Of a stretch of 64,000 nt of DNA, positions 5,403-33,600 are shown piece after piece. The position numbers were made by a program, and so were the translations under genes. The notes beneath the pieces are model-generated. The model worked only from the letters and a program-made list of their open reading frames with translations. It did no database searches and had not been told where the DNA came from. Source of the stretch: Macrostomum lignano (taxonomy: Eukaryota); NCBI GenBank assembly GCA_002269645.1, contig NIVC01000610.1, forward strand, positions 62,001-126,000, given 5' to 3'. Positions within the stretch are counted from its first letter, which is position 1. The number at the start of each line of letters is the position of its first letter.

Positions 5403-6166
5403 TTAATAAGTTTTGGATTTTCAGGGGATTTAGTTTTCGGGACGTTTCGGGAAACGTTTTCGCTTTGGTTCATACGGCTTCCCCGCCAGCTGACAATTTG
5501 AGAACGCGGGTAAACTTTTTTGCGCACCTTCTCAGACAAGAATCAAGTCGCCATCCATCCGGACCGTCGAGATATTCAACGATTCTACCAGAAGGTCGGA
5601 TCTTTCCCACAAGCGCCAGTGTATGTTCAATGCGCCCCTGTGATCTGTCACCGCAGTTAGAATATTGTATTTTTGGGATCTCCAAAGTTCTAAATGCGCT
5701 CTGAGATTTCATGGGAAGAAAGAAATTGAAAAGAACTGCAATTAAGGAGTAGGATAGGCAGTGGGCACCTGTGCCTGCTTTCTATGTTGTTTCAAGGACA
5801 CAATATAGGGAAAATATAGCTTAGAAAGCAGAACAGAATTCTCCTCACCAGTAAAGATTACAAACTCAACAGGACTTCAGAAAAACTAACAAAATTAACC
5901 TTCGCACATCCCCCACGATCTGCTTATTTCCCATCGACCCTAAACAGAAAGACAAGAGTTCCACTCTGACAACTAAACCAATATTAAAAGACCATTTCTG
6001 TCCAAAATCTGGTTGACAGAATTATGCAGTGATTTATTAGCTGACGGGCGTTCCTTAAATTTTGACTTTTCCGGACCTCACTGAGCGCGTAGCGAAAAAT
6101 TTTTCCTGGAAAATGGCTGCTGCTCTCCCGCAGGCAGGATCTTCTCTGGCTGTTGAGGAGGCGCCA

Positions 6167-9100: not shown

Positions 9101-12100
9101 GGGCTTTAGCATCAGGGGATTTAGCATCAGGGGCTTTAGCATCAGGGGATTTAGCATCAGGGGATTTAGCATCAGGGGATTTAGCATCAGGGGCTTTAGC
9201 ATCAGGGGATTTAGCATCAGGGGATTTAGCATCAGGGGATTTAGCATCAGGGGCTTTAGCATCAGGGGATTTAGCATCAGGGGATTTAGCATCAGGGGAT
9301 TTAGCATCAGGGGATTTAGCATCAGGGGATTTAGCATCAGGGGATTTAGCATCAGGGGATTTAGCATCAGGGGATTTAGCATCAGGGGATTTAGCATCAG
9401 GGGCTTTAGCATCAGGGGCTTTAGCATCAGGGGATTTAGCATCAGGGGCTTTAGCATCAGGGGATTTAGCATCAGGGATTTAGCATCAGGGGATTTAGCA
9501 TCAGGGGATTTAGCATCAGGGGATTTAGCATCAGGGGATTTAGCATCAGGGGATTTAGCATCAGGGGCTTTAGCATCAGGGGCTTTAGCATCAGGGGATT
9601 TAGCATCAGGGATTTAGCATCAGGGGATTTAGCATCAGGGGATTTAGCATCAGGGGATTTAGCATCAGGGGATTTAGCATCAGGGGATTTAGCATCAGGG
9701 GCTTTAGCATCAGGGGATTTAGCATCAGGGGATTTAGCATCAGGGGATTTAGCATCAGGGGATTTAGCATCAGGGGATTTAGCATCAGGGATTTAGCATC
9801 AGGGGATTTAGCATCAGGGGATTTAGCATCAGGGGATTTAGCATCAGGGGATTTAGCATCAGGGGATTTAGCATCAGGGGATTTAGCATCAGGGGATTTA
9901 GCATCAGGGGATTTAGCATCAGGGGATTTAGCATCAGGGGATTTAGCATCAGGGGCTTTAGCATCAGGGGCTTTAGCATCAGGGGATTTAGCATCAGGGG
10001 CTTTAGCATCAGGGGATTTAGCATCAGGGGATTTAGCATCAGGGGATTTAGCATCAGGGATTTAGCATCAGGGGATTTAGCATCAGGGGATTTAGCATCA
10101 GGGGCTTTAGCATCAGGGGCTTTAGCATCAGGGGCTTTAGCATCAGGGGATTTAGCATCAGGGGATTTAGCATCAGGGGATTTAGCATCAGGGGCTTTAG
10201 CATCAGGGGCTTTAGCATCAGGGGATTTAGCATCAGGGGATTTAGCATCAGGGGCTTTAGCATCAGGGGCTTTAGCATCAGGGGATTTAGCATCAGGGGA
10301 TTTAGCATCAGGGGATTTAGCATCAGGGGCTTTAGCATCAGGGGATTTAGCATCAGGGGCTTTAGCATCAGGGGATTTAGCATCAGGGGATTTAGCATCA
10401 GGGGATTTAGCATCAGGGGATTTAGCATCAGGGGCTTTAGCATCAGGGGATTTAGCATCAGGGATTTAGCATCAGGGGATTTAGCATCAGGGGCTTTAGC
10501 ATCAGGGGATTTAGCATCAGGGGATTTAGCATCAGGGGATTTAGCATCAGGGGATTTAGCATCAGGGGATTTAGCATCAGGGATTTAGCATCAGGGGATT
10601 TAGCATCAGGGGCTTTAGCATCAGGGGATTTAGCATCAGGGGATTTAGCATCAGGGGATTTAGCATCAGGGGATTTAGCATCAGGGGCTTTAGCATCAGG
10701 GGCTTTAGCATCAGGGGCTTTAGCATCAGGGGATTTAGCATCAGGGGATTTAGCATCAGGGGATTTAGCATCAGGGGCTTTAGCATCAGGGGATTTAGCA
10801 TCAGGGATTTAGCATCAGGGGATTTAGCATCAGGGGATTTAGCATCAGGGGATTTAGCATCAGGGGATTTAGCATCAGGGGATTTAGCATCAGGGGATTT
10901 AGCATCAGGGGCTTTAGCATCAGGGGCTTTAGCATCAGGGGATTTAGCATCAGGGGCTTTAGCATCAGGGGATTTAGCATCAGGGGCTTTAGCATCAGGG
11001 GATTTAGCATCAGGGGATTTAGCATCAGGGGATTTAGCATCAGGGGATTTAGCATCAGGGGCTTTAGCATCAGGGGCTTTAGCATCAGGGGCTTTAGCAT
11101 CAGGGGATTTAGCATCAGGGGATTTAGCATCAGGGGATTTAGCATCAGGGGATTTAGCATCAGGGGATTTAGCATCAGGGGATTTAGCATCAGGGGATTT
11201 AGCATCAGGGGATTTAGCATCAGGGGATTTAGCATCAGGGGATTTAGCATCAGGGGATTTAGCATCAGGGGATTTAGCATCAGGGGATTTAGCATCAGGG
11301 GATTTAGCATCAGGGGATTTAGCATCAGGGATTTAGCATCAGGGGATTTAGCATCAGGGGATTTAGCATCAGGGGATTTAGCATCAGGGGATTTAGCATC
11401 AGGGGATTTAGCATCAGGGGCTTTAGCATCAGGGGCTTTAGCATCAGGGGATTTAGCATCAGGGGCTTTAGCATCAGGGGATTTAGCATCAGGGATTTAG
11501 CATCAGGGGATTTAGCATCAGGGGATTTAGCATCAGGGGCATTAGCATCAGGGGATTTAGCATCAGGGGCTTTAGCACCAGGGGCTTTAGCATCAGGGGC
11601 TTTAGCATCAGGGGATTTAGCATCAAGGGATTTAGCATCAGGGGATTTAGCATCAGGGATTTAGCATCAGGGGATTTAGCATCAGGGGATTTAGCATCAG
11701 GGGCTTTAGCATCAGGGGCTTTAGCATCAGGGGCTTTAGCATCAGGGGATTTAGCATCAGGGATTTAGCATCAGGGGATTTAGCATCAGGGGCTTTAGCA
11801 TCAGGGGATTTAGCATCAGGGATTTAGCATCAGGGGATTTAGCATCAGGGGCTTTAGCATCAGGGGATTTAGCATCAGGGGATTTAGCATCAGGGGATTT
11901 AGCATCAGGGATTTAGCATCAGGGGATTTAGCATCAGGGATTTAGCATCAGGGGATTTAGCATCAGGGGCTTTAGCATCAGGGGATTTAGCATCAGGGGC
12001 TTTAGCATCAAGGGATTTAGCATCAGGGGCTTTAGCATCAGGGGCTTTAGCATCAGGGGATTTAGCATCAAGGGATTTAGCATCAGGGGATTTAGCATCA

Positions 12101-15100
12101 GGGGCTTTAGCATCAGGGGATTTAGCATCAGGGGCTTTAGCATCAGGGGCTTTAGCATCAGGGGCTTTAGCATCAGGGGATTTAGCATCAGGGGCTTTAG
12201 CATTAGGGGCTTTAGCATCAGGGGATTTAGCATCAGGGATTTAGCATCAGGGATTTAGCATCAGGGGCTTTAGCATCAGGGGCTTTAGCATCAGGGGCTT
12301 TAGCATCAGGGGCTTTAGCATCAGGGGCTTTAGCATCAGGGGATTTAGCATCAGGGGCTTTAGCATCAGGGGCTTTAGCATCAGGGGCTTTAGCATCAGG
12401 GGATTTAGCATCAGGGGCTTTAGCATCAGGGGCTTTAGCATCAGGGGATTTAGCATCAGGGGATTTAGCATCAGGGGATTTAGCATCAGGGGCTTTAGCA
12501 TCAGGGGCTTTAGCATCAGGGGCTTTAGCATCAGGGGCTTTAGCATCAGGGGATTTAGCATCAAGGGATTTAGCATCAGGGGCTTTAGCATCAGGGGCTT
12601 TAGCATCAGGGGATTTAGCATCAAGGGATTTAGCATCAGGGGATTTAGCATCAGGGGCTTTAGCATCAGGGGATTTAGCATCAGGGGATTTAGCATCAGG
12701 GGATTTAGCATCAGGGGATTTAGCATCAGGGGATTTAGCATCAAGGGATTTAGCATCAGGGGATTTAGCATCAGGGGCTTTAGCATCAGGGGATTTAGCA
12801 TCAGGGGATTTAGCATCAGGGGCTTTAGCATCAGGGGCTTTAGCATCAGGGGATTTAGCATCAGGGGCTTTAGCATCAAGGGATTTAGCATCAGGGGCTT
12901 TAGCATCAGGGGCTTTAGCATCAGGGGATTTAGCATCAAGGGATTTAGCATCAGGGGATTTAGCATCAGGGGATTTAGCATCAGGGGATTTAGCATCAGG
13001 GGCTTTAGCATCAGGGGCTTTAGCATCAGGGGCTTTAGCATCAGGGGCTTTAGCATCAGGGGATTTAGCATCAGGGGATTTAGCATCAGGGGATTTAGCA
13101 TCAGGGGATTTAGCATCAGGGGATTTAGCATCAGGGGATTTAGCATCAGGGGATTTAGCATCAGGGGCATTAGCATCAGGGGATTTAGCATCAGGGGCTT
13201 TAGCACCAGGGGCTTTAGCATCAGGGGCTTTAGCATCAGGGGATTTAGCATCAAGGGATTTAGCATCAGGGGATTTAGCATCAGGGGCTTTAGCATCAGG
13301 GGATTTAGCATCAGGGGCTTTAGCATCAGGGGATTTAGCATCAGGGGATTTAGCATCAGGGGATTTAGCATCAGGGGATTTAGCATCAGGGGATTTAGCA
13401 TCAAGGGATTTAGCATCAGGGGATTTAGCATCAGGGGCTTTAGCATCAGGGGATTTAGCATCAGGGGCTTTAGCATCAAGGGATTTAGCATCAGGGGCTT
13501 TAGCATCAGGGGCTTTAGCATCAGGGGATTTAGCATCAGGGATTTAGCATCAGGGGATTTAGCATCAGGGGATTTAGCATCAGGGGATTTAGCATCAGGG
13601 GCTTTAGCATCAGGGGCTTTAGCATCAGGGGCTTTAGCATCAGGGGATTTAGCATCAGGGGATTTAGCATCAGGGGATTTAGCATCAGGGGCTTTAGCAT
13701 CAGGGGATTTAGCATCAAGGGATTTAGCATCAGGGGATTTAGCATCAGGGGATTTAGCATCAGGGGATTTAGCATCAGGGGATTTAGCATCAGGGGCATT
13801 AGCATCAGGGGATTTAGCATCAGGGGCTTTAGCATCAGGGGCTTTAGCATCAGGGGATTTAGCATCAGGGGCTTTAGCATCAGGGGATTTAGCATCAGGG
13901 ATTTAGCATCAGGGGATTTAGCATCAGGGGATTTAGCATCAGGGGATTTAGCATCAGGGGATTTAGCATCAGGGGCTTTAGCATCAGGGGATTTAGCATC
14001 AGGGGCTTTAGCATCAGGGGATTTAGCATCAAGGGATTTAGCATCAGGGGATTTAGCATCAGGGGCTTTAGCATCAGGGGATTTAGCATCAGGGGATTTA
14101 GCATCAGGGGATTTAGCATCAGGGGATTTAGCATCAGGGGATTTAGCATCAGGGGATTTAGCATCAGGGGATTTAGCATCAGGGGATTTAGCATCAGGGG
14201 ATTTAGCATCAGGGATTTAGCATCAGGGGATTTAGCATCAGGGGATTTAGCATCAGGGGATTTAGCATCAGGGGATTTAGCATCAGGGGCTTTAGCATCA
14301 GGGGATTTAGCATCAGGGGATTTAGCATCAGGGGCTTTAGCATCAGGGGCTTTAGCATCAGGGGATTTAGCATCAGGGGCTTTAGCATCAGGGGATTTAG
14401 CATCAAGGGATTTAGCATCAGGGGATTTAGCATCAGGGGATTTAGCATCAGGGGCATTAGCATCAGGGGATTTAGCATCAGGGGCTTTAGCACCAGGGGC
14501 TTTAGCATCAGGGGCTTTAGCATCAGGGGATTTAGCATCAAGGGATTTAGCATCAGGGGATTTAGCATCAGGGGCTTTAGCATCAGGGGATTTAGCATCA
14601 AGGGATTTAGCATCAGGGGATTTAGCATCAGGGGATTTAGCATCAGGGGCTTTAGCATCAGGGGATTTAGCATCAGGGATTTAGCATCAGGGGATTTAGC
14701 ATCAGGGGCTTTAGCATCAGGGGATTTAGCATCAGGGGATTTAGCATCAGGGGATTTAGCATCAGGGGATTTAGCATCAGGGGATTTAGCATCAGGGGCT
14801 TTAGCATCAGGGGATTTAGCATCAGGGGATTTAGCATCAGGGGATTTAGCATCAGGGGCTTTAGCATCAGGGGATTTAGCATCAGGGGATTTAGCATCAG
14901 GGGATTTAGCATCAGGGGATTTAGCATCAGGGGATTTAGCATCAGGGATTTAGCATCAGGGGCTTTAGCATCAGGGGCTTTAGCATCAGGGGATTTAGCA
15001 TCAGGGGATTTAGCATCAGGGGATTTAGCATCAGGGGATTTAGCATCAGGGGATTTAGCATCAGGGGATTTAGCATCAGGGGATTTAGCATCAGGGGATT

Positions 15101-17234
15101 TAGCATCAGGGGCTTTAGCATCAGGGGATTTAGCATCAGGGGATTTAGCATCAGGGGATTTAGCATCAGGGATTTAGCATCAGGGGATTTAGCATCAGGG
15201 GATTTAGCATCAGGGGATTTAGCATCAGGGGATTTAGCATCAGGGGCATTAGCATCAGGGGATTTAGCATCAGGGGATTTAGCATCAGGGGCTTTAGCAT
15301 CAGGGGCTTTAGCATCAGGGGATTTAGCATCAGGGGATTTAGCATCAGGGGATTTAGCATCAGGGGATTTAGCATCAGGGGATTTAGCATCAGGGGATTT
15401 AGCATCAGGGGATTTAGCATCAGGGGATTTAGCATCAGGGGCTTTAGCATCAGGGGATTTAGCATCAGGGGCTTTAGCATCAGGGGATTTAGCATCAGGG
15501 GATTTAGCATCAGGGGATTTAGCATCAGGGGCTTTAGCATCAGGGGATTTAGCATCAGGGGATTTAGCATCAGGGGATTTAGCATCAGGGGCTTTAGCAT
15601 CAGGGGATTTAGCATCAGGGGATTTAGCATCAGGGGATTTAGCATCAGGGGATTTAGCATCAGGGGATTTAGCATCAGGGATTTAGCATCAGGGGATTTA
15701 GCATCAGGGGATTTAGCATCAGGGGCTTTAGCATCAGGGGCTTTAGCATCAGGGGATTTAGCATCAGGGATTTAGCATCAGGGGATTTAGCATCAGGGGC
15801 TTTAGCATCAGGGGATTTAGCATCAGGGGATTTAGCATCAGGGGCTTTAGCATCAGGGGATTTAGCATCAGGGGATTTAGCATCAGGGGCTTTAGCATCA
15901 GGGGATTTAGCATCAGGGGATTTAGCATCAGGGGATTTAGCATCAGGGGCTTTAGCATCAGGGGATTTAGCATCAGGGGATTTAGCATCAGGGGATTTAG
16001 CATCAGGGGATTTAGCATCAGGGGCTTTAGCATCAGGGATTTAGCATCAGGGGCTTTAGCATCAGGGGCTTTAGCATCAGGGGATTTAGCATCAGGATTT
16101 AGCATCAGGGATTTAGCATCAGGGGATTTAGCATCAGGGGCTTTAGCATCAGGGGATTTAGCATCAGGGGATTTAGCATCAGGGGCTTTAGCATCAGGGG
16201 TCTTTAGCATCAGGGGATTTAGCATCAGGGGCTTTAGCATCAGGGGATTTAGCATCAGGGGCTTTAGCATCAGGGGATTTAGCATCAGGGGCTTTAGCAT
16301 CAGGGGCTTTAGCATCAGGGGCTTTAGCATCAGGGGATTAGCATCAGGGGATTTAGCATCAGGGGATTTAGCATCAGGGGCTTTAGCATCAGGGGATTTA
16401 GCATCAGGGGATTTAGCATCAGGGGCTTTAGCATCAGGGGCTTTAGCATCAGGGGCTTTAGCATCAGGGGATTAGCATCAGGGGATTTAGCATCAGGGGC
16501 TTTAGCATCAGGGGATTTAGCATCAGGGGCTTTAGCACCAGGGGATTTAGCATCAGGGGATTTAGCATCAGGGGATTTAGCATCAGGGGCTTTAGCATCA
16601 GGGGATTTAGCATCAGGGGATTTAGCACCAGGGGCTTTAGTATCAGGGGATTTAGCATCAGGGGATTTAGCATCAGGGGCTTTAGCATCAGGGGCTTTAG
16701 CATAAGGGGATTTAGCATCAGGGGATTTAGCATCAGGAGCTTTAGCATCAGGGGATTTAGCATCAAGGGATTTAGCATCAGGGGCTTTAGCATCAGGGGA
16801 TTTAGCACCAGGGGCTTTAGCATCAGGGGCTTTAGCATCAGGGGCTTTAGCATCAGGGGATTTAGCATCAGGGGCTTTAGCACCTGGGGCTTTAGCATCA
16901 GGGGCTTTAGCATCAGGGGATTTAGCATCAGGGGATTTAGCATCAGGGGATTTAGCATCAAGGGATTTAGCATCAGGGGCTTTAGCATCAGGGGCTTTAG
17001 CATCAGGGGATTTAGCATCAGGGGATTTAGCATCAGGGGCTTTAGCATCAGGGGATTTAGCATCAGGGGCTTTAGCATCAGGGGCTTTAGCACCAAGGGC
17101 TTTAGCATCAGGGGCTTTAGCATCAGGGGCTTTAGCACCAGGGGCTTTAGCACCAGGGGCTTTAGCATCAGGGGATTTAGCATCAGGGGCTTTAGCACCA
17201 GGGGATTTAGCATCAGGGGATTTAGCATCAGGGG
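6167..17234. repeat. Giant 15-bp satellite TTTAGCATCAGGGG[C/A], about 11 kb and about 740 units
   Basis: Continuous tandem array with one dimorphic C/A position, scattered 14/16-bp units (almost all G-run length changes) and rare marker substitutions. Confidence 0.98.
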
Positions 17235-17523
17235 CCAGCATCAGCACCAGGGCGCCAGCACCAGGGGCGCCAGCACCAGGGGCGCCAGCACCAGGGCGCC
17301 AGCACCAGGGGCGCCAGCACCAGGGGCGCCAGCACCAGGGCGCCAGCACCAGGGCGCCAGCACCAGGGGCGCCAGCACCAGGGGCGCCAGCACCAGGGGC
17401 GCCAGCCAGGGCGCCAGCACCAGGGCGCCAGCACCAGGGGCGCCAGCACCAGGGCGCCAGCACCAGGGCGCCAGCACCAGGGGCGCCAGCACCAGGGCGC
17501 CAGCACCAGGGGCGCCAGCACCG
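17235..17523. repeat. GC-rich 14/15-bp array GGCGCCAGCACCAGG(G), related to the adjacent 15-bp satellite
   Basis: About 20 tandem units sharing the AGCAYCAGGGG core with the big array. Confidence 0.93.
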
Positions 17524-17978
17524 GGAAACAACGGTGATCCCCATTGCCAATCAAAAATATCTACTCTGACGAGGCAAACTGAATAGTATAACTTTTTAAC
17601 TTATCGAGTTGATGAAGCACTGATTCAACACACTAGTTTACACTGCTTTGGAAGGCTCCTTCCAAATAAGGCCAGTCCAGAGGCCTTTAAGAGGCCCATG
17701 ATTCATACTGAAACCATCAGCTTTGTGCGATGGTGTTGTATTTCAACTGGGAACAGGAGCCAGCCCAGTGCCAAAAAACAATGATTAACTGGACCCAATA
17801 CTTTTCGTCATGCAGAGCTGCGTTATAACTTAATTTTGTTACTTTTATTATTTTTCTCAGCCATTTATTAAACTCTGCAAACTGCCTGCATTATAGAAGT
17901 TTTGTATCGCTTTTGCATATAAGTTGCATGAATTTTCCTTCCAAAATGAAAATGTAACTTATATTGTAACTGATATTT

Positions 17979-19178: not shown

Positions 19179-22100
19179 TCAGGCATCGCCGATCAGGGCC
19201 AGAAGAATCTTGCGATAATCGCCGCTGGTGTCGTCCTTGATCCATTCGGCGAGGCTCTGCCCGAACTCCTTCTGGAAGGCGGTCTTGATCTGAACCATGT
19301 CCACCTCGCAGCGGCTGATCACGATGCGAAGCAGCGTCTTGTCGTTGGTGCCTGGAGACGAATAGAGGGCGTTGAATAGAGGATGTGCAACCGACAGCTC
19401 AGCCGCAGCTATTGCGCGGCGCATCTGAAGGCTGCTGCGTACGGCTGTTCAGACCAAGGACTGGAGGGTTGCCACACGTACCCTCAATTACCCCAGCTAA
19501 TGCTGGCACCCATTTTACCGCTGGGTGAACTGAAGCAATTCAGAGTTGAGTGTCTCGCTCAAGGACAAATTGTTCCAGCGGGATCGCGGATCGAACCCCT
19601 GACCCCGTTCAGTCGTGAGTTCAACGCTCTAACCACTACGCTACAACCCCATCAGACCAATCAGGAATCCAGAGTGTCTCACTCGCTGACTGCGGATCGG
19701 TTGTCGCCTTGAATAGTTACAACATTAGGACAGATATTTTTGCCATCAACCCCTCCCTTTCACTTAAAGTGACACTTTAAATATAGAAAGTCTGAAAACC
19801 TCAAAGTTTTTTTACACAATGCTCAATTTCTTGAAAAATTTTCCCACATTGCTTGTCACGCTCGCTCGATCCTTTTCTCTCTGATTGAGCATGATTGAGT
19901 CACTTACCCAGGCCCTTCATCGCCTTCTGCAGCGACTTAGCAAAATAGGCCGGCTTGTTCTGAATGCAGCGGACCAGAGTCAGCATGGCGCGGAGCAGGT
20001 CGCCAGACATCTCCGCCTTCAAGGAGTCCTCGAGCGTCTTGCCGGTCAATTTCTCGTATTCGGCAAACAGGGCGCGCAGGTGGGCGTTGTTGTTGCCGCA
20101 GAGGATCTCGTTGAACTTGCTCTCGTCCGTGCCCCACTTGCCGACGCCGGCCTCCTGCAGGGCCTGGGCGTCCTTCTTCACCTGCTCCGGATCGTAGGAG
20201 CTGCCCTCCGGCCGGGCGCCGGTGAGCAGAGACACCAGAATGCGCTTGAAGTGGCCGGATGTGTCCGACATAACGTCGTCCTCAAGTTCGCGATTGTAAG
20301 CTGAGTTTGGTGTGCGGTATTGGAGTCGAAGAGTTGTTAGAAAGTTCATGACTCATTGGGATGGCATTTTGCACGCTGTTTTTAGTTGTTTTCAGTGCGT
20401 GGTGTGTTTCGCCTTTCAGGGTCAGAGGGTGAGTTTCGTGAGCCAATAGTTGCTGTGTCTATAGTACGTAGTGCATTGTGCCCTTCAGGAGTCAGAGAGC
20501 TTTTCTGAACAAATCGTTCGGTTCCAGTAGATTAACCATCCATCTGGAATGCTTATTTTGGCCAGGGCATACAATATGAATCTGATCACTGAAAGCGGAG
20601 CAAACTCACTGGCTTTGTAGATTTTCTTGATCTCCTCGATTTGGGCCTGCGTTCTGGTGCAGATGACCTCAATCAGGCAGTCCTCGTCCGTGCCCAGGCC
20701 CTTCACCGCCTCGCGAAGCTCTTTAGCGTCGTACTCGGCCGGTCCCAGGCACAGATTCTGGCAGATCTTGTTGAAATTGCCGCTCAGCTCGCTGTCCAAC
20801 TCGCGTTTGAGATCTTTGCCGTATTTCATCTTGAAGGTGCGCACAATTTCCATACGCTGGGTGACGGTCCGATGGCCGAGCACGTTGATGATGCTCTCTT
20901 CGTTGGTGCCCAAACCTTTCATCGCCTTGCGCAGCTGCTCCGCATCGGCCGCAGCGCTGAAGTTCGGATACGGCTTCAGCGTGCCCTCCTGGACGTACTC
21001 CTCCTGCAAGAAGAAGGCCTCCCCGGCCGGCTCTGGTGGCTTTTCCTCCTTCAGCACAATGGCGTCCGCCTTCTCGTGGTCGGTCTTTTTCACCTGTAGA
21101 AAGTGCAATTTTGCAATTTTTGCAATACGTTCTGCTGCAGACACCGATGACTAATAGAGCACACAGATCTAGTTATTCGCACCTCAGTCTCCACTTTGTG
21201 ACTTGGCGGCGGCGGCGGCTTCTCCGCCTTCTTGGGCGGCGGCGGCGGGGGCGGCGGCGCAGGGTCCCTGCTGGCACTCTTTGAGGGAGGCATAAACGGC
21301 TTCGGTTTTGGATCCGAGCTCCGCTTGTTGATTGACTTTGGCGCGTGCAGCGGCTTCTTGTGCCCCGGCTTGGCGATGTGGATGGTCAGTAGGAATGAGT
21401 CGTCTGACTCGTCAAGTTCAGCTGACAGCACCTGCATCGGCAATGTGGAAAACTTCAAGCTTCTCATCGGCTTTAGAGTGACAGGCTCGGCGCGAGCAGG
21501 ATAAAATTTCTTAGAAATTAAGACCAATTTGATTATTTCATGAGTAAGCTTACCTTGCCAAATTTCTGGTCCTCAATGGCAGCTTGAAATCCTCCATCTT
21601 TCCGCGCGAACTGCAGCAAGTGCGCGTAGACGTGCTGCAGCTGAGTTTTAAAGTCGCCGTCGCCCTTGCTGACAGGCAGGCAGGGCGGATCGGCGACGAT
21701 CTTCTCAACCTTCTCAGTCTTCTTGGACTCGTCCACTAGGCGCCGGATGTCGTCCAGGGTGCTCTTGCGAGTCTCGTCCATGCGCTGCGACAGCTGTTGA
21801 GTCAGCTGGTTCAGCTGCTGCGGAGTCACGCCCTGTGGTGTGTTTTTTTCGCAACTAGTAAGAAAATGTTGTGCCAGCACCAACTTTAAGTAGGTTTTTA
21901 AGTATGAGCCCCCCGAGGGCCCTGACATTTTCACTCTGCAGTGTCCTCCCTCCCGTCCCGGCAGAATTCTAATCTAGCCACTCGTACGCTTGTAGCAAGC
22001 TTGGTGGCGGCGGGTCACTGCCGGCGTGAGCGCGTCAACTTTTACGATATTAGGGCCAATTTTTTCCTACGATTAGAAAAACGTAACGCCTAAAGATGAG

Positions 22101-23374
22101 ACAGTTTTTAGCGCACAGATTTCCCAGATCTGCCTTTATGCTCGTATGGGAAAAGTTTTAAAGAAAAGGTCTGAAATTTTCGTGTTAGGAAGACACTTGG
22201 TGGCAATGACATTTAACTTCAACCGTATCTTAGAGTTATCCAAAAGGTTTTAGCAACAATCTAAATTAGCAACTAGCGATCGTTGACGATATTTATAGAT
22301 AAAGGCACTTGTTTAAGCAGGTAAAAATGCCTAAAATCAAAGCATGACAATTTTTGAGCAGCACGTTGAATGGAGCACTTATTACCTGCAGCGAAGGGTC
22401 TGGCAAAGCGGGCACGGCGCTGGGCGGCTGGCCTGGGAAGCCGCCGCGGAAGTTCACATCGTTTGGGGTGCGCACCTCCCAGCCGAGGCCCCCGGTGGGA
22501 CCGCCCGCTGCGCCGCCTCCGTACAGGTTGATCTGCGTGCCGGAGTGATTGACAGCTGAAAAGCCCTGGTCAGGCACCGACGAAGCTGAGAGATCGTCAG
22601 CCGGGTCTGTCCTTTCCCAGGCTTCGTACGGACCGCTGGCAGCTGCGGCAGCCGCCGAGGCACCACCAGCACCGGAGCGGCGCAGGCGATCGCGGGAGTT
22701 GCTGCGTCTGCCGCCGCCGTTGCGCCGTCGCGTCCGAAGGCCGTCCTCGAGGTCGCTGTCCCAGCTGGAAAGTTCGACGGGATTTCGAGGATATGAGGGT
22801 TAGGGTTAGGGTGTGTGCACCTGTATATATATATATATGTTCTCAGAGAAACGACCAATGCACTCAACCCATACTTCAGCAGCTACAACAGCACTAATCG
22901 CTCACCCATTAATATCGGAGTTGCTGACGCTGCTCTGATCAAGGCAGTCGTCGATCTCGTTCCAACCGTGCACATCCTCGCAGTGATAGGTTCGTGAAGT
23001 GACGAAACTCTGCTGCTTGGTGACGCGGTGCATGGCAACCGATTTGACAATGCGTTTGCCCGGCTTCAGGCAGAAAGGAGCCCGGTACTGGAATGTGACC
23101 TCGCGACCGTTCAAAAATCGCTTGTTGGGATCCGGTCGCGTGCCGTCGGTTGTGAAGAAAATGTTGCAGTTGTTGCTCTCTGAAACGTGCAACGGTTGTT
23201 TTATAGATAGCCTTCACAATTTAAGTGATTAAATCTAACAAAAATCAAAATCAGTAGCGCACCGGTGGACATTTCAATGTAGGTTGAGGTGTCGATGCAG
23301 GTGCTGGGCTTGCCATTCACGTGGCTCCTCAGCGGCGTAACGACTGGGGCGGCAATTCCGCCTGCGGACGGCAT
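19179..23374 (-). CDS. Annexin with a long N-terminus carrying DZANK1-like domains (about 780 aa, 8 exons)
   Basis: Exons 23374-23263, 23179-22906, 22764-22386, 21832-21554, 21431-21183, 21093-20610, 20300-19908 and 19351-19179. All junctions are GT-AG and phase-compatible, total 2343 nt. Annexin repeats: KAMKGLGTNEESII, AVKGLGTDEDCLIEV, GVGKWGTDESKFNEIL, KAMKGLGTNDKTLLRI, ending DTSGDYRKILLALIGDA*. N-terminus MPSAGGIAAPVVTPLR...NIFFTTDGTRPDP...KPGKRIVKSVA and internal FKTQLQHVYAHLL...FGKVLSA resemble DZANK1 (from recalled family sequence). Confidence 0.88.
19382..19650 (-). mobile_element. tRNA-derived SINE, copy 1 (last intron of the annexin gene)
   Basis: Minus strand starts GGGGTTGTAGCGTAGTGG (A box) and has GGTTCGATCC (B box), followed by the core GTCCTTGAGCGAGACACTCAAC...CACCCAGCGGTAAAATGGGTGCC. 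It is colinear with 49515-49783. Confidence 0.88.
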
Positions 23375-24372
23375 CTGAAATGTTAAATAATGGTCGGTAT
23401 ATTGAAGAAACAGGACGTTCGTCCTGCATGGATGTAAAATTATAGTTTTAAAAATATATTGTTACAAAACTACTGTTGACTTAGTATAAAATGTGCATCA
23501 CAAAATTCATCATAGCTTACTTATTTACTTTTTTGTCATAAAAATCATATTAAATTTCAATTTAAGAGGAAGAATTTACGCTTTGACAATTAAAAATACT
23601 AGCTAGTAAACAGAATTCTTCAAGTACATTCAGTTCTATGAATACAATGTCTATATTTTAGCTATTGTTAATGATCTTGGCTTAAAGCAAGTGATATTAA
23701 AAAATACTAAAAAGGAACCATAGACAAATTCCAAAGAGCTGATATTTTACATAATTTGACATTTAAAAGTAGCTGTGTGCAAATTATGATGATTTTTATA
23801 AATTCAATATAAAGAATTTGTAAACATCATCATTTAAAGTGATACAAAATAATTCTTTTGCTTTATTTCAAGCTAAATAAGAAAGTTAGAAAAAGTAAAA
23901 CACAGTTGAAATATTATTTTAAAAGGACCACCAAGCAACAAAAATTTAAGTTGAGTTAAATGTTAAATCGTTTAATTATAAAGTTTAACTTAAAGATTGT
24001 TGGTTTTATATAGCCTGACATGACACTGTGAAATGCTACAAATAAAAACAGTAAAATACTTTAAATAAAGCGAAATAAAAAACAAAGTCTATCTTTTCTT
24101 GCGTTAATATCAAGGATTTTTTAAAATTAGAATATAAAGTACTTGTTATTACATTAGCTATCGTAGATATTATACTTTATAGATAAGAAATTCAGAAACA
24201 AAAATGATACCGTACACGCAAGTCAAATTCCCTGCACTACAAAAATACTAAAATTTAATGTACAATTAGTGTGGAAAAATTGTAATAAAACTTTAATGTT
24301 GTGCTTTTAATCTGAAACTTGAGCTGAAAGCATTTTGTAAGAATTCATTGCATAGAGTTTGTTTATATGCAT

Positions 24373-24492: not shown

Positions 24493-25122
24493 ATGGACCA
24501 TGGAGCATCAAACTGGGACGTTTCAAAACGTTATAAAACAGACGTTCTAGTCGGAAATTGGTTTGAAGAACGACTAGTGTACGATAGAAAGAACCATACG
24601 CATCCATCGAGCTACAGCATCGACTTTCAACAAAGGGGATACCAGCAGCCAGATGTTGTGCTTCGAAGGAACGGCTGGATTCGCTCTAACGGAGTAGGCA
24701 AGGAAATACTGCTAGCCCATCACGGCGATGCCTACAAGAAAAACTGGATCACTTGGTACGACGAGGACTTCAACGGTCGAGGCTTGCCTAGGAACCCCCC
24801 GCTGCGCGACTGGCACTCAGGCAACATGGCCTGGAGCCCGGAGCGCTCAGACTTCCCCGTCCAGGGCAGCCCGACCAACTGGGGCTTGAAGGAAAGACTA
24901 GACAAGCGATGGAATACCAGTCTACAGGAGCGCTCGACCACGTCAAAGAATGATTTCAGTACTACGTACAACGCGTCATATCTGAAGCCGAGAACGGAGG
25001 ACCTGCTGGCTGCACGACAGCCGAGCTTCCTGCCACCAATCAGCGGGAGGATGCCGGCAAACACCGGCAGTCAGGACAAGTTCGAGGAGCCGGCCCAGAA
25101 GCTGTCGGTCGTGGCCACCTAG
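24493..25122 (+). CDS. CFAP107: CFAP107/C1orf158-like ciliary microtubule inner protein, 209 aa, single exon
   Basis: Uninterrupted ORF with family motifs W..SKRYKTDVLVGNWFEER, LLAHHG, ITWYDEDFN, PPLRDW...AWSPERSDFP...PTNWGL. Confidence 0.85.
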   Translation: MDHGASNWDVSKRYKTDVLVGNWFEERLVYDRKNHTHPSSYSIDFQQRGYQQPDVVLRRNGWIRSNGVGKEILLAHHGDAYKKNWITWYDEDFNGRGLPRNPPLRDWHSGNMAWSPERSDFPVQGSPTNWGLKERLDKRWNTSLQERSTTSKNDFSTTYNASYLKPRTEDLLAARQPSFLPPISGRMPANTGSQDKFEEPAQKLSVVAT

Positions 25123-30600: not shown

Positions 30601-33600
30601 GCGGCTTTGCATTGGCATTTGCGAGCGATTAGGGACCTGTTTGTGAGGCGAGGGTTTGTCTTTGATCACCTGGCTTGCTAAATCACGTGTGCTGGATTCT
30701 GGATGATGCAATAATCCACTAGAGCTAGAGAGATGAGACATTATATAGAAATACTTTGAGCTTGGATGCAAAATTTGAGATTGATTTTAGAGAATAGAGA
30801 TTAATAAGGATGGGAGATAACAGACGAGAGATAAGAGATAAGAGATTGAGATTAGATTAGAGATGAGAGATTATAGAGATTGAGATTAGAGATTAGAAAT
30901 CAGAGTCTAGAAATCATAGATTAGAGACAATAGACAAGAGATTGAAATTGAGATTAGATTAGAGATTAGAAATCAGAGATCAGAGATTAGAGATAAGAGA
31001 TTATAGACTGCATGTAGAGATTGAAAATAGAAAATTGGAGATTGGAGATTAAAAAGTGGAACTTTGAGAGTGAAGGAGAAAATAAGAATTAGAGAGTAGA
31101 GATTAAAGATCAGAGACTATAGATAAATTATTACAGATTAGAGATTGAAGATTGGAAATTGGGAAGATTACAAGAAGATTAAACAAAGTAAAAAAGCTCG
31201 AAAAAGCGAACCTGGGCAGCTCAACAACGAAGCACACGACCAGCTGTACGGCAAAGAAGGTGATCTCCAGCTTGTAGAAGGCCTGACCAACGTAGGCCTC
31301 CCAGCAGTGCACAGCGGAGCACCGGGGCGCCACCCCAACTCCGCAGGTGTCCTTGGTGTCGCAGGTGATTATGGAATAAATCGAAATAACCAGAACGGTT
31401 AAACTGGCCAACCTGAGAAAGATGCAGCGGCCCAACGTCACAGCCAGCTCAGTGTCCGGGGTGTACTCTTCAAGGCGAGCCAGCAGCTGGAACAGGATCG
31501 GCAGGATCGCCACCAGCAGCGAGATGATCACCATAGGCAGGTACTGGTAGGCCAGGTAGGCGAAGCTGCTCGTGTCCACCCCGGCAGCCGTGGTGTACTC
31601 GGCCGAAACCTTCTGGGCCTGGTAGATGGCAAAGCCGGCGCCGCACAGCAGGCCGAGAACCAGGATGTTCACCAGGACTCGCTTGGCAATCAGGCTGCAG
31701 CCGCCGCATCTGCCAGCTTCCAGCCGTCGCTGCAACAGTCGGTGAAGATCGAGTTCGGCGACCAGGTTGTTGCGAAGGAGCTGTTTGGCCAGGTTGGCAG
31801 TCTTGGAGTCGCTCAGGCCGAAGTCCCAGGCCGAGAGGATGAGCGGCGAGAACCGGGTGGACTTGGACGACACTGACGGCTGGGCGCGCTGGAGCAGCAC
31901 CTCCTTGAAGGCGGCGCCAGTTCTGATAGTTGAGGGCGTTTGAGAGGCGAGTGTGAGGATCTTCGGTGGGCGACGGGGCAGATGGGATTATTGCGAAGGG
32001 ATAATCAGGGAAAAAATCAGGAAGGGATAATCAGGTAGGGATAATCAGGGAGGGATAATCAGGTAGGGATAATCAGGGAGGGATAAATCAGGGAGGGATA
32101 ATCAGGTAGGGATAATCAGGGAGGGATAATCAGGTAGGGATAATCAGGGAGGGATAAATCAGGGAGGGATAATCAGGTAGGGATAATCAGGGAGGGATAA
32201 TAAGGGAACGGATAATCAGGGAGGGATAATCAGGTAGGGATAATCAGGTAGGGATAATCAGGGAGGGATAATAAGGGAACGGATAATCAGGGAGGGATAA
32301 TCAGGTAGGGATAATCAGGTAGGGATAATCAGGGAGGGATAATAAGGGAACGGATAATCAGGGAGGGATAATCAGGTAGGGATAATCAGGGAGGGATAAT
32401 CAGGGAGGGATAATAAGGGAACGGATAATCAGGGAGGGATAATCAGGTAGGGATAATCAGGGAGGGATAATCAGGGAGGGATAATAAGGGAACGGATAAT
32501 CAGGGAGGGATAATAAGGGAGAGATAATCAGGTAGGGATAATCAGGGAGGGATAATCAGGTAGGGATAATCAGGTAGGGATAATCAGGGAGGGATAATAA
32601 CGGAACGGATAATCAGGGAGGGACAATCAGGGAGGCACAGTGAGGGAGCTAATGTCAAGCTCATCTCCATCTATAAAGGCGCAGGAGACGGAGTCAAGAG
32701 TCTGCAGGCCGAAACCTCAGCCAAGCAGAAGCAATACGCATGTAGAATTGCACCTTTCGAGCATGAACAACATGCTGATGAAAAAGGCGGCTCCAGTGAC
32801 GGCGAGGTAAGCCACGGGCATGTTGTAACTCAATGCTCCAATGCTTAGCGCGGTGGGGAAATAGTAGCCTACGAACAGGATAGTGTTCTCCAGAATGCCC
32901 TGCAGAGAATTAATAGGTAATACTTCTTTGTAAATCAGCTCTCAATGCCAATGCCAGAAAATATTTTTGTTTTATTAATTTATTTCTTGGAATGGTAACA
33001 ATTAGTTTAGGTACAAATAATGTCGAAGAAATTGATACATTTGTTTAAAATGCACAACTAAATTTCTACATGTCTATATTTTACGCTCGAACTTTTTATT
33101 AAAGAAACAAAAAACTGTTTTAAAACCTTTTTAACAAAGGTTTCGACATTTTTAGTTGTATTCTAGGTATTTTTGAGTTAAGCAAAGCATGTAACAAATA
33201 TGAAAAGTACATAAATAACGTGGACATCTTTTTAATCTCTAATATATCCAATACAAAATTTAACAAAAAATTGACACTCAAAACATCAGCTTGCAACATT
33301 AAGTCCTTTGTTTATGAGCGTAAGCATTCTTCTACAAATATATTTGCATTTGAATAAATTAAATCTAGAATTTAAAATTGCAGACCTGTGACTGATACTC
33401 TTAAGCACTCATTTACTTACACGGAACCACATTAATAATTTTGCGCTATTTTCACGGAACGGAAACACAAAAATCTATACCATCTATTAAAAATATTCCT
33501 TATAGACATTATATTTTTGTTTAACTATAATGTTGAATTATGTTATATTATATTAATATTAATATTTCATTATTAATTGTCTTATCTAGCATACTTTTCA

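What the first reader, a model, noticed from the sequence alone, without database searches (positions are those of the whole stretch)
19179..23374. DZANK1-annexin chimera: ciliary trafficking domains with zinc ribbons and ankyrins replaced by an annexin core
All eight exons join in phase into one ORF of about 780 aa. Exons 1-2 (GGIAAPVVTPLR...IDTSTYIEMSTESNNCNIFFTTDGTRPDP...TFQYRAPFCLKPGKRIVKSVA...SFVTSRTY) match the N-terminal Ig/Fn3-associated (CHB_HEX_C-like) domain of DZANK1. Exons 4-5 (GDGDFKTQLQHVYAHLLQFARKDGGFQAAIEDQKFGKVLSAELDESDDSFLLTIHI) match my recollection of the DZANK1 central segment (GRGYWRRQLDHISAHL...[22 protein letters not shown]). No CxxC double zinc ribbons or ankyrin repeats are present. 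Instead a poly-Pro linker leads into four annexin repeats with intact KGLGT loops. DZANK1 is known to work with NINL and dynein in photoreceptor ciliary transport, and annexins bind phospholipid in a Ca2+-dependent way. The fusion could therefore be a Ca2+-gated tether between membrane and the dynein/ciliary machinery (inference). I do not know of this architecture being described.
Basis: partly seen in the sequence, partly recalled or inferred. Interest (0 to 1): 0.82.

Follow-up and report, generated by a model that had tools for sequence, protein, structure and literature searches.

The report
DZANK1-like annexin fusion gene, flatworm
This flatworm gene really does join the front half of the cilium-base protein DZANK1 to a complete calcium- and membrane-binding annexin; it belongs to an old, widespread animal gene family that sits unnamed in databases, and it exists alongside a normal DZANK1 gene instead of replacing it.

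Summary
Eight GT-AG exons on the minus strand (23374-19179) join in phase into a 780-aa protein. It is 100% identical to an annotated Macrostomum lignano hypothetical protein.

- **Domains:** the N-terminus and a central segment are significantly similar to DZANK1 (PDB 11xu, E 6.5e-20). The C-terminus is a full four-repeat annexin core (Pfam E 8e-93). There are no zinc ribbons and no ankyrin repeats.
- **One gene, not two:** in the M. lignano paralogue a single uninterrupted exon spans the DZANK1-like/annexin junction. The linker is conserved as far as tapeworms, and every region shows pN well below pS.
- **Not a replaced DZANK1:** M. lignano also has a canonical DZANK1 with zinc ribbons and ankyrins. 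The fusion forms its own clade across flatworms, a brachiopod, a nemertean, molluscs and a priapulid. Echinoderms and hemichordates have a version that keeps the ankyrins.
- **What was lost and kept:** the zinc ribbons are the module reported to bind NINL. A conserved LC8-type motif (SGTQIN) is retained.
- **Best reading:** an LC8-dimerised, Ca2+-dependent membrane binder carried on a DZANK1-type localisation module. A ciliary-base site is plausible but unproven.

I found no paper describing this architecture. Interest is moderate.

The parts
23263..23374 (-). Exon 1 (aa 1-37), with the conserved start MPSAGG...
   Evidence: The same start (MPxxG[GA]) occurs in all full-length orthologues. The intron position at aa 37/38 is shared with T. 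szidati.
22906..23179 (-). Exon 2 (aa 38-128). Together with exon 1 it encodes the N-terminal Fn3_assoc/CHB_HEX_C-like beta-sandwich, aa 1-110 (window 23374-22962).
   Evidence: Pfam. DZANK1 alignment. AF2 pLDDT about 90 and all-beta. Conserved against the paralogue locus.
22386..22764 (-). Exon 3 (aa 129-255): a predicted disordered region that carries the conserved LC8-type motif.
   Evidence: pLDDT below 50. In-phase splice sites.
22518..22550 (-). NHSGTQINLYG (aa 201-211), a TQT-like LC8 (DYNLL) anchor motif.
   Evidence: N[HY][SN]GTQ[IV]N is conserved in the fusion proteins of flatworms, Lingula, Tubulanus, snails and Priapulus; the unnamed ENA protein P0005 lacks it. It occupies the same relative position as TQTVGLFYP in canonical DZANK1. 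dN/dS 0.12 between the paralogues. Motif rules from PMC6607443.
21554..21832 (-). Exon 4 (aa 256-348): a long helix (aa 259-293) and the first part of the DZANK1-type central domain (VSKGDGDFKTQLQHVYAHLLQFARKDGGFQAAIEDQKFGKV).
   Evidence: The intron position at aa 348/349 is shared with T. szidati.
21183..21431 (-). Exon 5 (aa 349-431): the end of the central domain (LSAELDESDDSFLLTIHIAKPG) followed by the Pro-rich disordered linker.
21094..21182 (-). Intron 5 (89 nt), sitting exactly between the DZANK1-like half and the annexin half (ETE|VKK).
   Evidence: Reading through it hits a stop. The paralogue has no intron here; one exon spans the junction.
20610..21093 (-). Exon 6 (aa 432-592): the conserved pre-core linker (...FFLQEEYVQEGTLKP), annexin repeat 1 and most of repeat 2.
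   Evidence: The linker is conserved in cestodes, Lingula and Tubulanus. Pfam. There is no in-frame Met upstream of repeat 1 within this exon.
19908..20300 (-). Exon 7 (aa 593-723): the end of annexin repeat 2, repeat 3 (GKWGT variant) and the start of repeat 4.
   Evidence: The intron position at aa 592/593 is shared with T. szidati.
19179..19351 (-). Exon 8 (aa 724-780 plus the TGA stop): the rest of annexin repeat 4.

Best explanation
Window 23374-19179 (minus strand) is one protein-coding gene of Macrostomum lignano. It belongs to an old family that exists only as unnamed or generically named database entries. In this family a paralogue of DZANK1 is fused, in a single reading frame, to a complete annexin core.

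Shown:
- The protein is a string of folded modules joined by long disordered linkers.
- In order, these are: (1) an N-terminal Ig-like Fn3_assoc domain; (2) a disordered stretch with a conserved SGTQIN motif of the LC8 (DYNLL) 'TQT' type; (3) a long helix and a small alpha/beta domain homologous to DZANK1 residues ~457-546; (4) a ~95-aa Pro-rich linker ending in a conserved FFxxEEYxxEGTLKP motif; (5) four annexin repeats with the Ca2+-site signatures intact.
- It lacks the zinc ribbons and the ankyrin repeats. The zinc ribbons are the module reported to bind NINL.
- The same genome also encodes a canonical DZANK1.

Inferred mechanism:
- An LC8 dimer clamps two copies together through the TQI motif.
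- The DZANK1-type module places the dimer on microtubule-based structures. The most likely sites are the basal body and transition-zone doublets, where DZANK1 and LC8 have been placed.
- The two annexin cores, on long flexible tethers, bind acidic phospholipid when Ca2+ rises.
- The result would be a Ca2+-switched link between microtubules and membrane, comparable to the annexin A2-S100A10 tetramer.

The ciliary site is the least certain step.
For: Single gene:
- Eight in-phase GT-AG exons and an annotated protein that is 100% identical.
- In paralogue locus L002 one uninterrupted exon (12469-13161) encodes the end of the central domain, the linker and annexin repeats 1-2.
- The linker across the junction is conserved between Macrostomum and cestodes and in Lingula and Tubulanus.
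- Window and paralogue DNA are similar only in the exons.
- pN is well below pS in every region; dN/dS is 0.12-0.28 in the regions where dS could be estimated.
- Three intron positions, in both halves of the gene, are shared with Trichobilharzia.

Homology:
- DZANK1 in PDB, E 6.5e-20, two stretches.
- Pfam Fn3_assoc and Annexin x4.
- ANXA4 E 3e-98 and a gapless alignment to ANXA6 with GxGT and the downstream D/E kept.

Family and paralogy:
- 762 relatives at E<=1e-3.
- Fusion architecture in Schistosoma, Echinostoma, Paragonimus, Anoplocephala, Lingula, Tubulanus, Bradybaena and Priapulus, with an Ank-containing version in Asterias.
- Canonical DZANK1 in M. lignano, Tubulanus and cestodes.
- Fusion clade 75/100, flatworm subclade 85/100.
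- Annexin cores of fusion proteins are each other's nearest neighbours.

LC8 motif:
- The motif is conserved at the equivalent position to the canonical TQTVGLFYP.
- DZANK1 co-purifies specifically with DYNLL1/2 (PMC4617706).
- A DZANK1 dimer and an LC8 dimer have been modelled on the transition-zone A-tubule (bioRxiv 10.64898/2026.06.11.731632).

Fold: N-domain pLDDT about 90, annexin core 80-95, linkers below 45.

Circumstantial: the divergent neighbour about 1.1 kb away is CFAP107, Pfam E 5.6e-52.
Against: - There is no expression, localisation or binding data for this protein or any orthologue.
- The motif is TQI/TQV, not TQT. Many TQT-containing peptides fail to bind LC8 (PMC6607443), so binding is not assured.
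- It is unknown which DZANK1 segment contacts tubulin. The DZANK1 assignment in the cryo-ET map was itself guided by AlphaFold fitting and comes from a preprint.
- The central domain is predicted only at pLDDT 50-68.
- No X-box was found in the intergenic region shared with CFAP107.
- Whether the ambulacrarian Ank+annexin proteins share the same fusion event is unresolved (6/100 bootstrap).
Confidence: 0.6

Rival explanations
1. The same fusion protein, but working away from cilia. It would be an A7/A11-type cytoplasmic annexin whose unusual head serves only for LC8-mediated dimerisation or general microtubule association. Possible roles are vesicle traffic, membrane repair or tegument/epidermal membrane dynamics.
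For: - The core is most similar to broadly expressed annexins: ANXA4, ANXA6 and A7/A11-like proteins.
- The closest stand-alone flatworm annexins carry Gly/Pro/Tyr-rich heads of the A7/A11 type.
- LC8 is a general hub enriched in places unrelated to dynein (PMC6607443).
- Over-expressed DZANK1 also decorates the cytoplasmic microtubule network (PMC4617706).
- The NINL-binding zinc ribbons are absent.
Against: - All conserved non-annexin modules are DZANK1-type, and DZANK1 has been localised to the ciliary base and transition zone.
- The neighbouring gene is the ciliary CFAP107.
- None of this is direct evidence.
Confidence: 0.3
2. This is the flatworm DZANK1 itself, with its zinc ribbons and ankyrins replaced by an annexin. 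It would still work with NINL and dynein in ciliary transport and add a Ca2+-gated membrane anchor.
For: - Real DZANK1 homology at the N-terminus and in the central segment.
- A retained LC8-type motif.
Against: - M. lignano has a canonical DZANK1 in three near-identical gene copies (P0027 cluster). Tubulanus and cestodes also have both kinds of gene.
- The fusion clade is separate from canonical DZANK1.
- NINL binding maps to the zinc-ribbon region that is absent here.
Confidence: 0.07
3. Gene-model artefact: two adjacent genes, a truncated DZANK1-like gene and an annexin gene, that only appear to join.
For: The junction in the window rests on a predicted 89-nt intron. I could not inspect RNA reads.
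Against: - The paralogue has the junction inside one exon.
- Exon 6 has no in-frame Met before annexin repeat 1.
- The linker is conserved across phyla.
- The same architecture was annotated independently in more than 10 species, including RefSeq models.
- The two halves track each other phylogenetically.
- The linker itself is under purifying selection, dN/dS 0.25.
Confidence: 0.02

Closest known systems
[quoted passage not shown]
   Same: - N-terminal Fn3_assoc/CHB_HEX_C-like beta-sandwich (aa 3-105 align to DZANK1 2-103).
- Central domain (aa 294-383 align to DZANK1 457-546).
- An LC8-type TQx motif followed by a helix just upstream of the central domain.
- The same order of modules.
   Different: - No double zinc ribbons, which are the NINL-binding part.
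- No ankyrin repeats.
- The C-terminus is an annexin core.
- The motif is TQI, not TQT.
- It is a paralogue; a canonical DZANK1 coexists in the same genome.
Annexins with long N-terminal heads (A7/A11 type); closest solved cores are ANXA4 and ANXA6
   Same: - A four-repeat core with 53-62% identity to many A11/A7/A4-like annexins.
- ANXA4 E 3e-98.
- Ca2+-site signatures conserved.
- A variable N-terminal head that sets localisation and partners.
   Different: - The head is not a low-complexity Gly/Pro/Tyr region.
- It is a 470-aa multi-module DZANK1-type region with two folded domains and a short linear motif.
Annexin A2-S100A10 heterotetramer (comparison of mechanism only)
   Same: Proposed logic: a small dimeric hub binds a short motif in the annexin's N-terminal region. 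This makes the annexin bivalent and lets it bridge membrane and cytoskeleton.
   Different: - The hub here would be LC8, not an S100 protein.
- The motif lies about 270 residues upstream of the core.
- Nothing has been tested. The resemblance rests on general knowledge and inference.
Ambulacrarian DZANK1-like-Ank-annexin proteins (Asterias rubens XP_033629438 'DZANK1-like isoform X1'; Saccoglossus annexin with Ank repeats, P0218)
   Same: - Fn3_assoc domain, TQT motif, central domain, no zinc ribbons, C-terminal four-repeat annexin core.
- The Ank-annexin junction is 65% identical between the starfish and the acorn worm.
   Different: - These proteins keep ankyrin repeats between the central domain and the annexin core.
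- Their motif is the canonical TQTVGLFYP.
- They do not group with the protostome fusion clade in my tree, so one origin versus two is unresolved.

Membership tests
Annexin superfamily (Pfam PF00191) | Four tandem ~70-aa annexin repeats forming a ~310-aa all-helical core | tested here: met
   Pfam finds 4 stretches, E 8.1e-93. Near-full-length, gapless alignment of residues 3-309 of the 311-aa core to the first half of ANXA6; ANXA4 covers residues 4-309 at E 3e-98. The AF2 core is all-alpha with pLDDT 80-95.
Annexin superfamily (Pfam PF00191) | Type II Ca2+-site signature: GxGT loop plus an acidic residue about 38 residues downstream | tested here: met
   KGLGT in repeats 1, 2 and 4 and GKWGT in repeat 3. 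The downstream residues SELSG, SDTSG, AEMSG and DDTSG align with the equivalent ANXA6 residues. This is a sequence-level test only.
Annexin superfamily (Pfam PF00191) | Ca2+-dependent binding to acidic phospholipid | not testable with these tools
   Needs a liposome co-sedimentation or similar assay.
DZANK1 orthologues | N-terminal Fn3_assoc/CHB_HEX_C-like domain | tested here: met
   Pfam 26.3 bits against a cut-off of 23. Aligns to DZANK1 2-103, i-E 7e-13.
DZANK1 orthologues | Double zinc ribbons (PF12773, about 10 CxxC motifs) | tested here: not met
   No DZR hit and zero CxxC motifs. Canonical members have about 10.
DZANK1 orthologues | C-terminal ankyrin repeats | tested here: not met
   No Ank hit. 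The introns are too short to hide further exons.
DZANK1 orthologues | Central SPGRGYWRKQxDH...FRAxIxEPRMGK domain | tested here: met
   aa 294-383 align to DZANK1 457-546. Profile alignment across 70 family members.
DZANK1 orthologues | LC8 (DYNLL) binding through a TQT motif upstream of the central domain | tested here: inconclusive
   The motif here is GTQIN where canonical members have TQTVGLFYP. I/V at position +1 fits the stated preference for a mid-sized hydrophobic or H-bonding residue (PMC6607443). Binding itself has not been tested.
DZANK1 orthologues | Orthology: the DZANK1 of its genome | tested here: not met
   A separate canonical DZANK1 exists in M. lignano (P0027). The fusion clade is separate at 75/100.
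DZANK1-like-annexin fusion clade (undescribed; database entries named 'Annexin' or 'uncharacterized') | Co-linear Fn3_assoc - TQ[IV] motif - helix - central domain - linker - annexin x4, without DZR or Ank | tested here: met
DZANK1-like-annexin fusion clade (undescribed; database entries named 'Annexin' or 'uncharacterized') | Clade-specific motifs N[HY][SN]GTQ[IV]N and [YF]Fxx[ED][ED]Yxx[ED]GTLKP before the core | tested here: met
   NHSGTQIN and FFLQEEYVQEGTLKP.
DZANK1-like-annexin fusion clade (undescribed; database entries named 'Annexin' or 'uncharacterized') | Groups with the other fusion proteins in both halves and shares intron positions with them | tested here: met
   N-terminal plus central-domain tree: 75/100, flatworm subclade 85/100. 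Annexin-core nearest neighbours are the cestode, Lingula and Tubulanus fusion proteins. Three intron positions are shared with T. szidati.

The most novel reading that the evidence does not exclude
An ancient bilaterian protein, lost in vertebrates, in which an LC8-dimerised DZANK1-type microtubule-doublet-binding module carries two annexin cores on long tethers. It would form a Ca2+-switched bridge between transition-zone or basal-body microtubules and the ciliary membrane. That would make it a candidate regulated microtubule-membrane connector at the ciliary gate of invertebrates.
Probability: 0.15. Interest if true: 0.8.

Novelty: new variant of a known kind. Interest (0 to 1): 0.52.

Why it matters
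DZANK1 is poorly understood. It has only recently been modelled, with LC8, on the outer surface of transition-zone doublets. How microtubules are coupled to the ciliary membrane, and how Ca2+ acts at the ciliary base, are open questions.

A conserved natural fusion of the DZANK1 localisation module to a textbook Ca2+/phospholipid binder is a 'Rosetta stone' hint that DZANK1-type proteins work next to membrane.

It also offers a tractable test system. M. lignano has transgenesis and RNAi, and schistosomes and planarians have cell atlases.

For annexin biology, it adds a structured N-terminal head of a new kind and a possible LC8-based way of making an annexin bivalent.

For annotation, it shows that entries now labelled 'annexin A11', 'annexin A7/11', 'Annexin A6' or 'DZANK1-like' in several phyla belong to one family.

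Tried and rejected
- **Word-indexed search with the N-domain alignment:** it found only fragments. The exhaustive representative search was needed.
- **Foldseek of the AF2 model (aa 1-398) against PDB:** only generic Fn3/Ig-like hits at E >= 2.5e-3 and no DZANK1. That library stops at April 2026 and evidently lacks 11xu. The fold search therefore neither adds to nor detracts from the sequence match.
- **Annexin-core database search:** the core is so conserved (53-62% identity to many annexins) that rank alone could not show orthology. I used nearest-neighbour distances instead.
- **RFX X-box in the 1.1-kb region shared with CFAP107:** none found.
- **tRNA in intron 7:** ARAGORN found none. Rfam tRNA scored 17.8 bits against a gathering score of 29.
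- **Literature:** no relevant paper holds both 'annexin' and 'DZANK1'. Nothing came up for Fn3_assoc with annexin, for Mlig000517, or for annexin at the transition zone. Two flatworm annexin family surveys do not mention a long-headed member.
- **A third class, 'Fn3_assoc + Ank without zinc ribbons':** considered and set aside. The Batillaria protein nests among canonical lophotrochozoan DZANK1s, so it is probably a model or isoform lacking the zinc-ribbon exons. The Glandiceps protein pairs weakly with Asterias and may be the front part of an Ank+annexin gene.
- **Hidden ankyrin exons in the window's introns:** rejected, because the introns are only 83-556 nt long.
- **Structure job with the spliced 780-aa sequence:** It was rerun with P0001 as the first row.


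Full report
**1. What is in the sequence**

On the minus strand between 23374 and 19179 there are eight exons with AG acceptors and GT donors:
- 23374-23263
- 23179-22906
- 22764-22386
- 21832-21554
- 21431-21183
- 21093-20610
- 20300-19908
- 19351-19179

They join in phase into a 2343-nt CDS of 780 codons plus a stop.

The product is 100% identical to the NCBI protein 'hypothetical protein BOX15_Mlig000517g1, partial [Macrostomum lignano]' (P0001). The window is therefore genomic DNA of the free-living flatworm M. lignano, and the gene is already annotated as a single model.

**2. Domain content**

- Pfam finds four annexin repeats (E 8.1e-93).
- It finds an N-terminal Fn3_assoc domain at aa 33-102 (26.3 bits, cut-off 23).
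- It finds a just-sub-threshold CHB_HEX_C_1 match.
- Against PDB sequences, the non-annexin part hits one protein family only. That is DZANK1 (11xu chain G1, E 6.5e-20), in two stretches. aa 3-105 align to DZANK1 2-103, and aa 294-383 align to DZANK1 457-546.
- There is no CxxC motif anywhere and no zinc-ribbon or ankyrin hit.
- The annexin core aligns without gaps to ANXA6 and scores E 3e-98 against ANXA4.
- KGLGT is present in repeats 1, 2 and 4. Repeat 3 has the usual GKWGT variant. The downstream acidic residues are conserved in all four repeats.
- AlphaFold2 gives a confident beta-sandwich for aa 1-110 (pLDDT about 90).
- It gives a long helix at aa 259-293, a small two-helix plus hairpin domain at aa 316-367 (pLDDT 50-68) and a confident annexin core (80-95).
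- The stretches aa 110-255 and aa 370-460 are predicted disordered.

The only correction is that three loops, not four, read KGLGT.

**3. One gene or two?**

I could not inspect RNA reads, but several independent lines settle the question.

- **(a) Paralogue exon.** M. lignano has a paralogue (P0002, 764 aa; 76% identical over the whole protein, 59% by BLASTP over the head) at locus L002. There, a single uninterrupted exon (L002 12469-13161) encodes the end of the central domain, the Pro-rich linker, HKMETEVKQTSHEKADAI... and annexin repeats 1-2. In that copy the two halves are joined without any splicing assumption. The window copy has an 89-nt intron exactly at ETE|VKK.
- **(b) No independent start.** Exon 6 has no in-frame Met upstream of repeat 1.
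- **(c) Conserved linker.** The linker across the junction is conserved far beyond Macrostomum. HKVETEVKKTDHEKADAIVLKEEKPPEP..FFLQEEYVQEGTLKP matches Hymenolepis HEVETEVRQSRNQKAAPIELKKEEKPPEK..YFETEEYKCEGTLKP. The YFETEEYxxEGTLKP motif recurs in Lingula and Tubulanus.
- **(d) Exon-only similarity.** DNA similarity between the window and L002 is confined to exons 2-8, with matching boundaries.
- **(e) Purifying selection.** pN is well below pS in every region between the two paralogues. dN/dS is 0.12 for the motif region and the annexin core, 0.21 for the central domain and 0.25 for the linker. Synonymous sites are near saturation, so these ratios are approximate.
- **(f) Shared introns.** Intron positions at aa 37/38, 348/349 and 592/593, which lie in both halves, are shared with the Trichobilharzia szidati orthologue.

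**4. The family**

An exhaustive profile search with the pre-annexin region found 762 relatives at E<=1e-3. Pfam scans and name look-ups show two main architectures.

Canonical DZANK1 (Fn3_assoc + double zinc ribbons + Ank) is found from a filasterean (Pigoraptor) and a sponge (Sycon) to vertebrates.

The fusion (Fn3_assoc + central domain + annexin x4, without zinc ribbons or ankyrins) is found in:
- Macrostomum
- schistosomatids (Schistosoma, Trichobilharzia, Heterobilharzia)
- Echinostoma, Paragonimus and Opisthorchis
- a monogenean (Cichlidogyrus)
- cestodes (Anoplocephala, Hymenolepis, Mesocestoides, Hydatigera, Dibothriocephalus)
- the brachiopod Lingula
- the nemertean Tubulanus
- snails (Bradybaena, Candidula, Nucella)
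- Priapulus

Starfish (Asterias) have Fn3_assoc + central domain + Ank + annexin. The acorn worm Saccoglossus has a model with Ank + annexin that is 65% identical to the starfish protein across the junction.

The sources name these entries 'Annexin', 'annexin A11', 'annexin A7/11', 'Annexin A6', 'DZANK1-like' or 'uncharacterized'. I found no paper that describes the architecture.

**5. Paralogue, not replacement**

M. lignano has its own canonical DZANK1 (P0027 and two near-identical gene copies: Fn3_assoc + DZR + Ank). Tubulanus and cestodes also have both kinds of gene.

A neighbour-joining tree on 198 columns (N-domain plus central domain, 70 proteins) recovers the protostome fusion proteins as a clade in 75/100 bootstraps. 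It recovers the flatworm fusion proteins in 85/100.

The annexin cores of fusion proteins are each other's nearest neighbours across phyla: window, then cestodes, Lingula and Tubulanus. Both halves have therefore been inherited together.

Whether the ambulacrarian Ank+annexin genes stem from the same fusion event is unresolved (6/100). Two histories remain possible:
- one fusion in an early bilaterian, followed by ankyrin loss in protostomes
- two independent fusions

**6. A conserved short motif**

In the otherwise poorly conserved disordered region, the fusion proteins of flatworms, Lingula, Tubulanus, snails and Priapulus share N[HY][SN]GTQ[IV]N[LVI][WYF]G. The unnamed ENA protein P0005 does not. 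In the window this is NHSGTQINLYG, aa 201-211.

Canonical DZANK1s, including that of M. lignano, carry ..TQTVGLFYP at the equivalent place. That place is after the zinc ribbons and just before the helix and central domain.

TQT is the anchor of the LC8/DYNLL recognition motif. Q at position 0 and a mid-sized hydrophobic or H-bonding residue at positions -1 and +1 are the stated requirements (PMC6607443). TQI and TQV fit these, and G at -2 matches the optimal VSRGTQTE.

DZANK1 co-purifies specifically with DYNLL1 and DYNLL2 (PMC4617706). A 2026 preprint models a DZANK1 dimer and an LC8 dimer as neighbours on the A-tubule of transition-zone doublets.

By contrast, NINL binding was mapped to the DZANK1 zinc-ribbon region, aa 244-317. 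That region is absent here.

**7. Most likely mechanism**

The domain string, the intact Ca2+-site signatures, the conserved LC8-type motif and the loss of the NINL-binding module are shown.

The following steps are inferred:
- LC8 dimerises the protein.
- The DZANK1-type module docks it on microtubule-based structures, most plausibly the basal body or transition zone.
- The annexin cores, on ~95-residue flexible tethers, bind acidic membrane when Ca2+ rises.
- This would give a Ca2+-switched microtubule-membrane link, with logic like the annexin A2-S100A10 tetramer.

Weak circumstantial support for a ciliary setting comes from the gene neighbours:
- The divergently transcribed neighbour, 1.1 kb from the start codon, is CFAP107.
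- The paralogue lies next to a PKD2-like channel gene.

No X-box was found.

The main rival is the same molecule working off-cilium in general membrane traffic or repair.

**8. Verdict**

The gene is one member of an old, widespread, undescribed DZANK1-paralogue-annexin family. It is a new variant of known kinds and is already present in annotations. Interest is moderate: a useful functional hint for DZANK1 and for regulated microtubule-membrane coupling, with simple decisive experiments available.

Noticed in passing
window 24493-25122 (+): A single-ORF gene for CFAP107, a cilia- and flagella-associated protein (Pfam PF22595, E 5.6e-52). It lies head-to-head with the fusion gene; the two start codons are about 1.1 kb apart. 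No RFX X-box was found between them.
   Followed up: partly
window 19579-19650 (-), inside intron 7: A degenerate tRNA-like element with A- and B-box-like sequences (GTAGCGTAGTGGTTAGAGC...GGTTCGATCC). Rfam tRNA scores 17.8 bits against a gathering score of 29, and ARAGORN calls nothing. It is possibly a tRNA-derived SINE or a tRNA pseudogene. There is one copy in the window.
   Followed up: partly
window ~22796-22840 (-), inside intron 2: A short (TA)n run followed by a telomere-like CCCTAACCCTAACCCT (2.5 units of CCCTAA/TTAGGG).
   Followed up: no
window ~6000-17550 (-): A long stretch with strong GC skew (0.30-0.38). It contains several large minus-strand ORFs that match Pfam Extensin_1 (two above its cut-off, E as low as 1.8e-37). 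This looks like a repetitive Pro-rich coding region or gene array just downstream of the fusion gene.
   Followed up: partly
window 31103-31900 (-): An ORF with a TMC-domain match (PF07810, 25.4 bits against a cut-off of 25). It is probably an exon of a TMC-like channel gene.
   Followed up: no
window 23375-23386 (-): A splice-acceptor-like ttaacatttcag directly abuts the start ATG. This suggests a 5'-UTR intron or spliced-leader trans-splicing at this site. This is an inference and was not tested.
   Followed up: no
L002 12469-13161 and 19105-24364: The M. lignano paralogue lacks intron 5, so one exon spans the DZANK1-like/annexin junction. This is either intron gain in the window copy or intron loss in the paralogue. 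Its downstream neighbour is a PKD2-like polycystin channel gene. There is no synteny with the window outside the gene itself.
   Followed up: partly
P0020 (Bradybaena, 1096 aa) and P0024 (Priapulus, 1288 aa): These fusion-family models carry 8 and 11 annexin repeats. They may be true tandem annexin cores (annexin A6-like) or merged neighbouring annexin genes.
   Followed up: no
P0027 cluster (M. lignano canonical DZANK1): Canonical DZANK1 is present as three near-identical annotated genes (Mlig021025 g1-g3). The fusion gene also has near-identical copies (5 member sequences on 2 contigs). Both fit the known partial genome duplication of this species.
   Followed up: no
PMC13594227 (planarian study): RNAi of a planarian gene named dzank1 reduced regeneration of TH+ dopaminergic neurons. 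I could not tell whether that gene is the canonical DZANK1 or the annexin-fusion paralogue.
   Followed up: no
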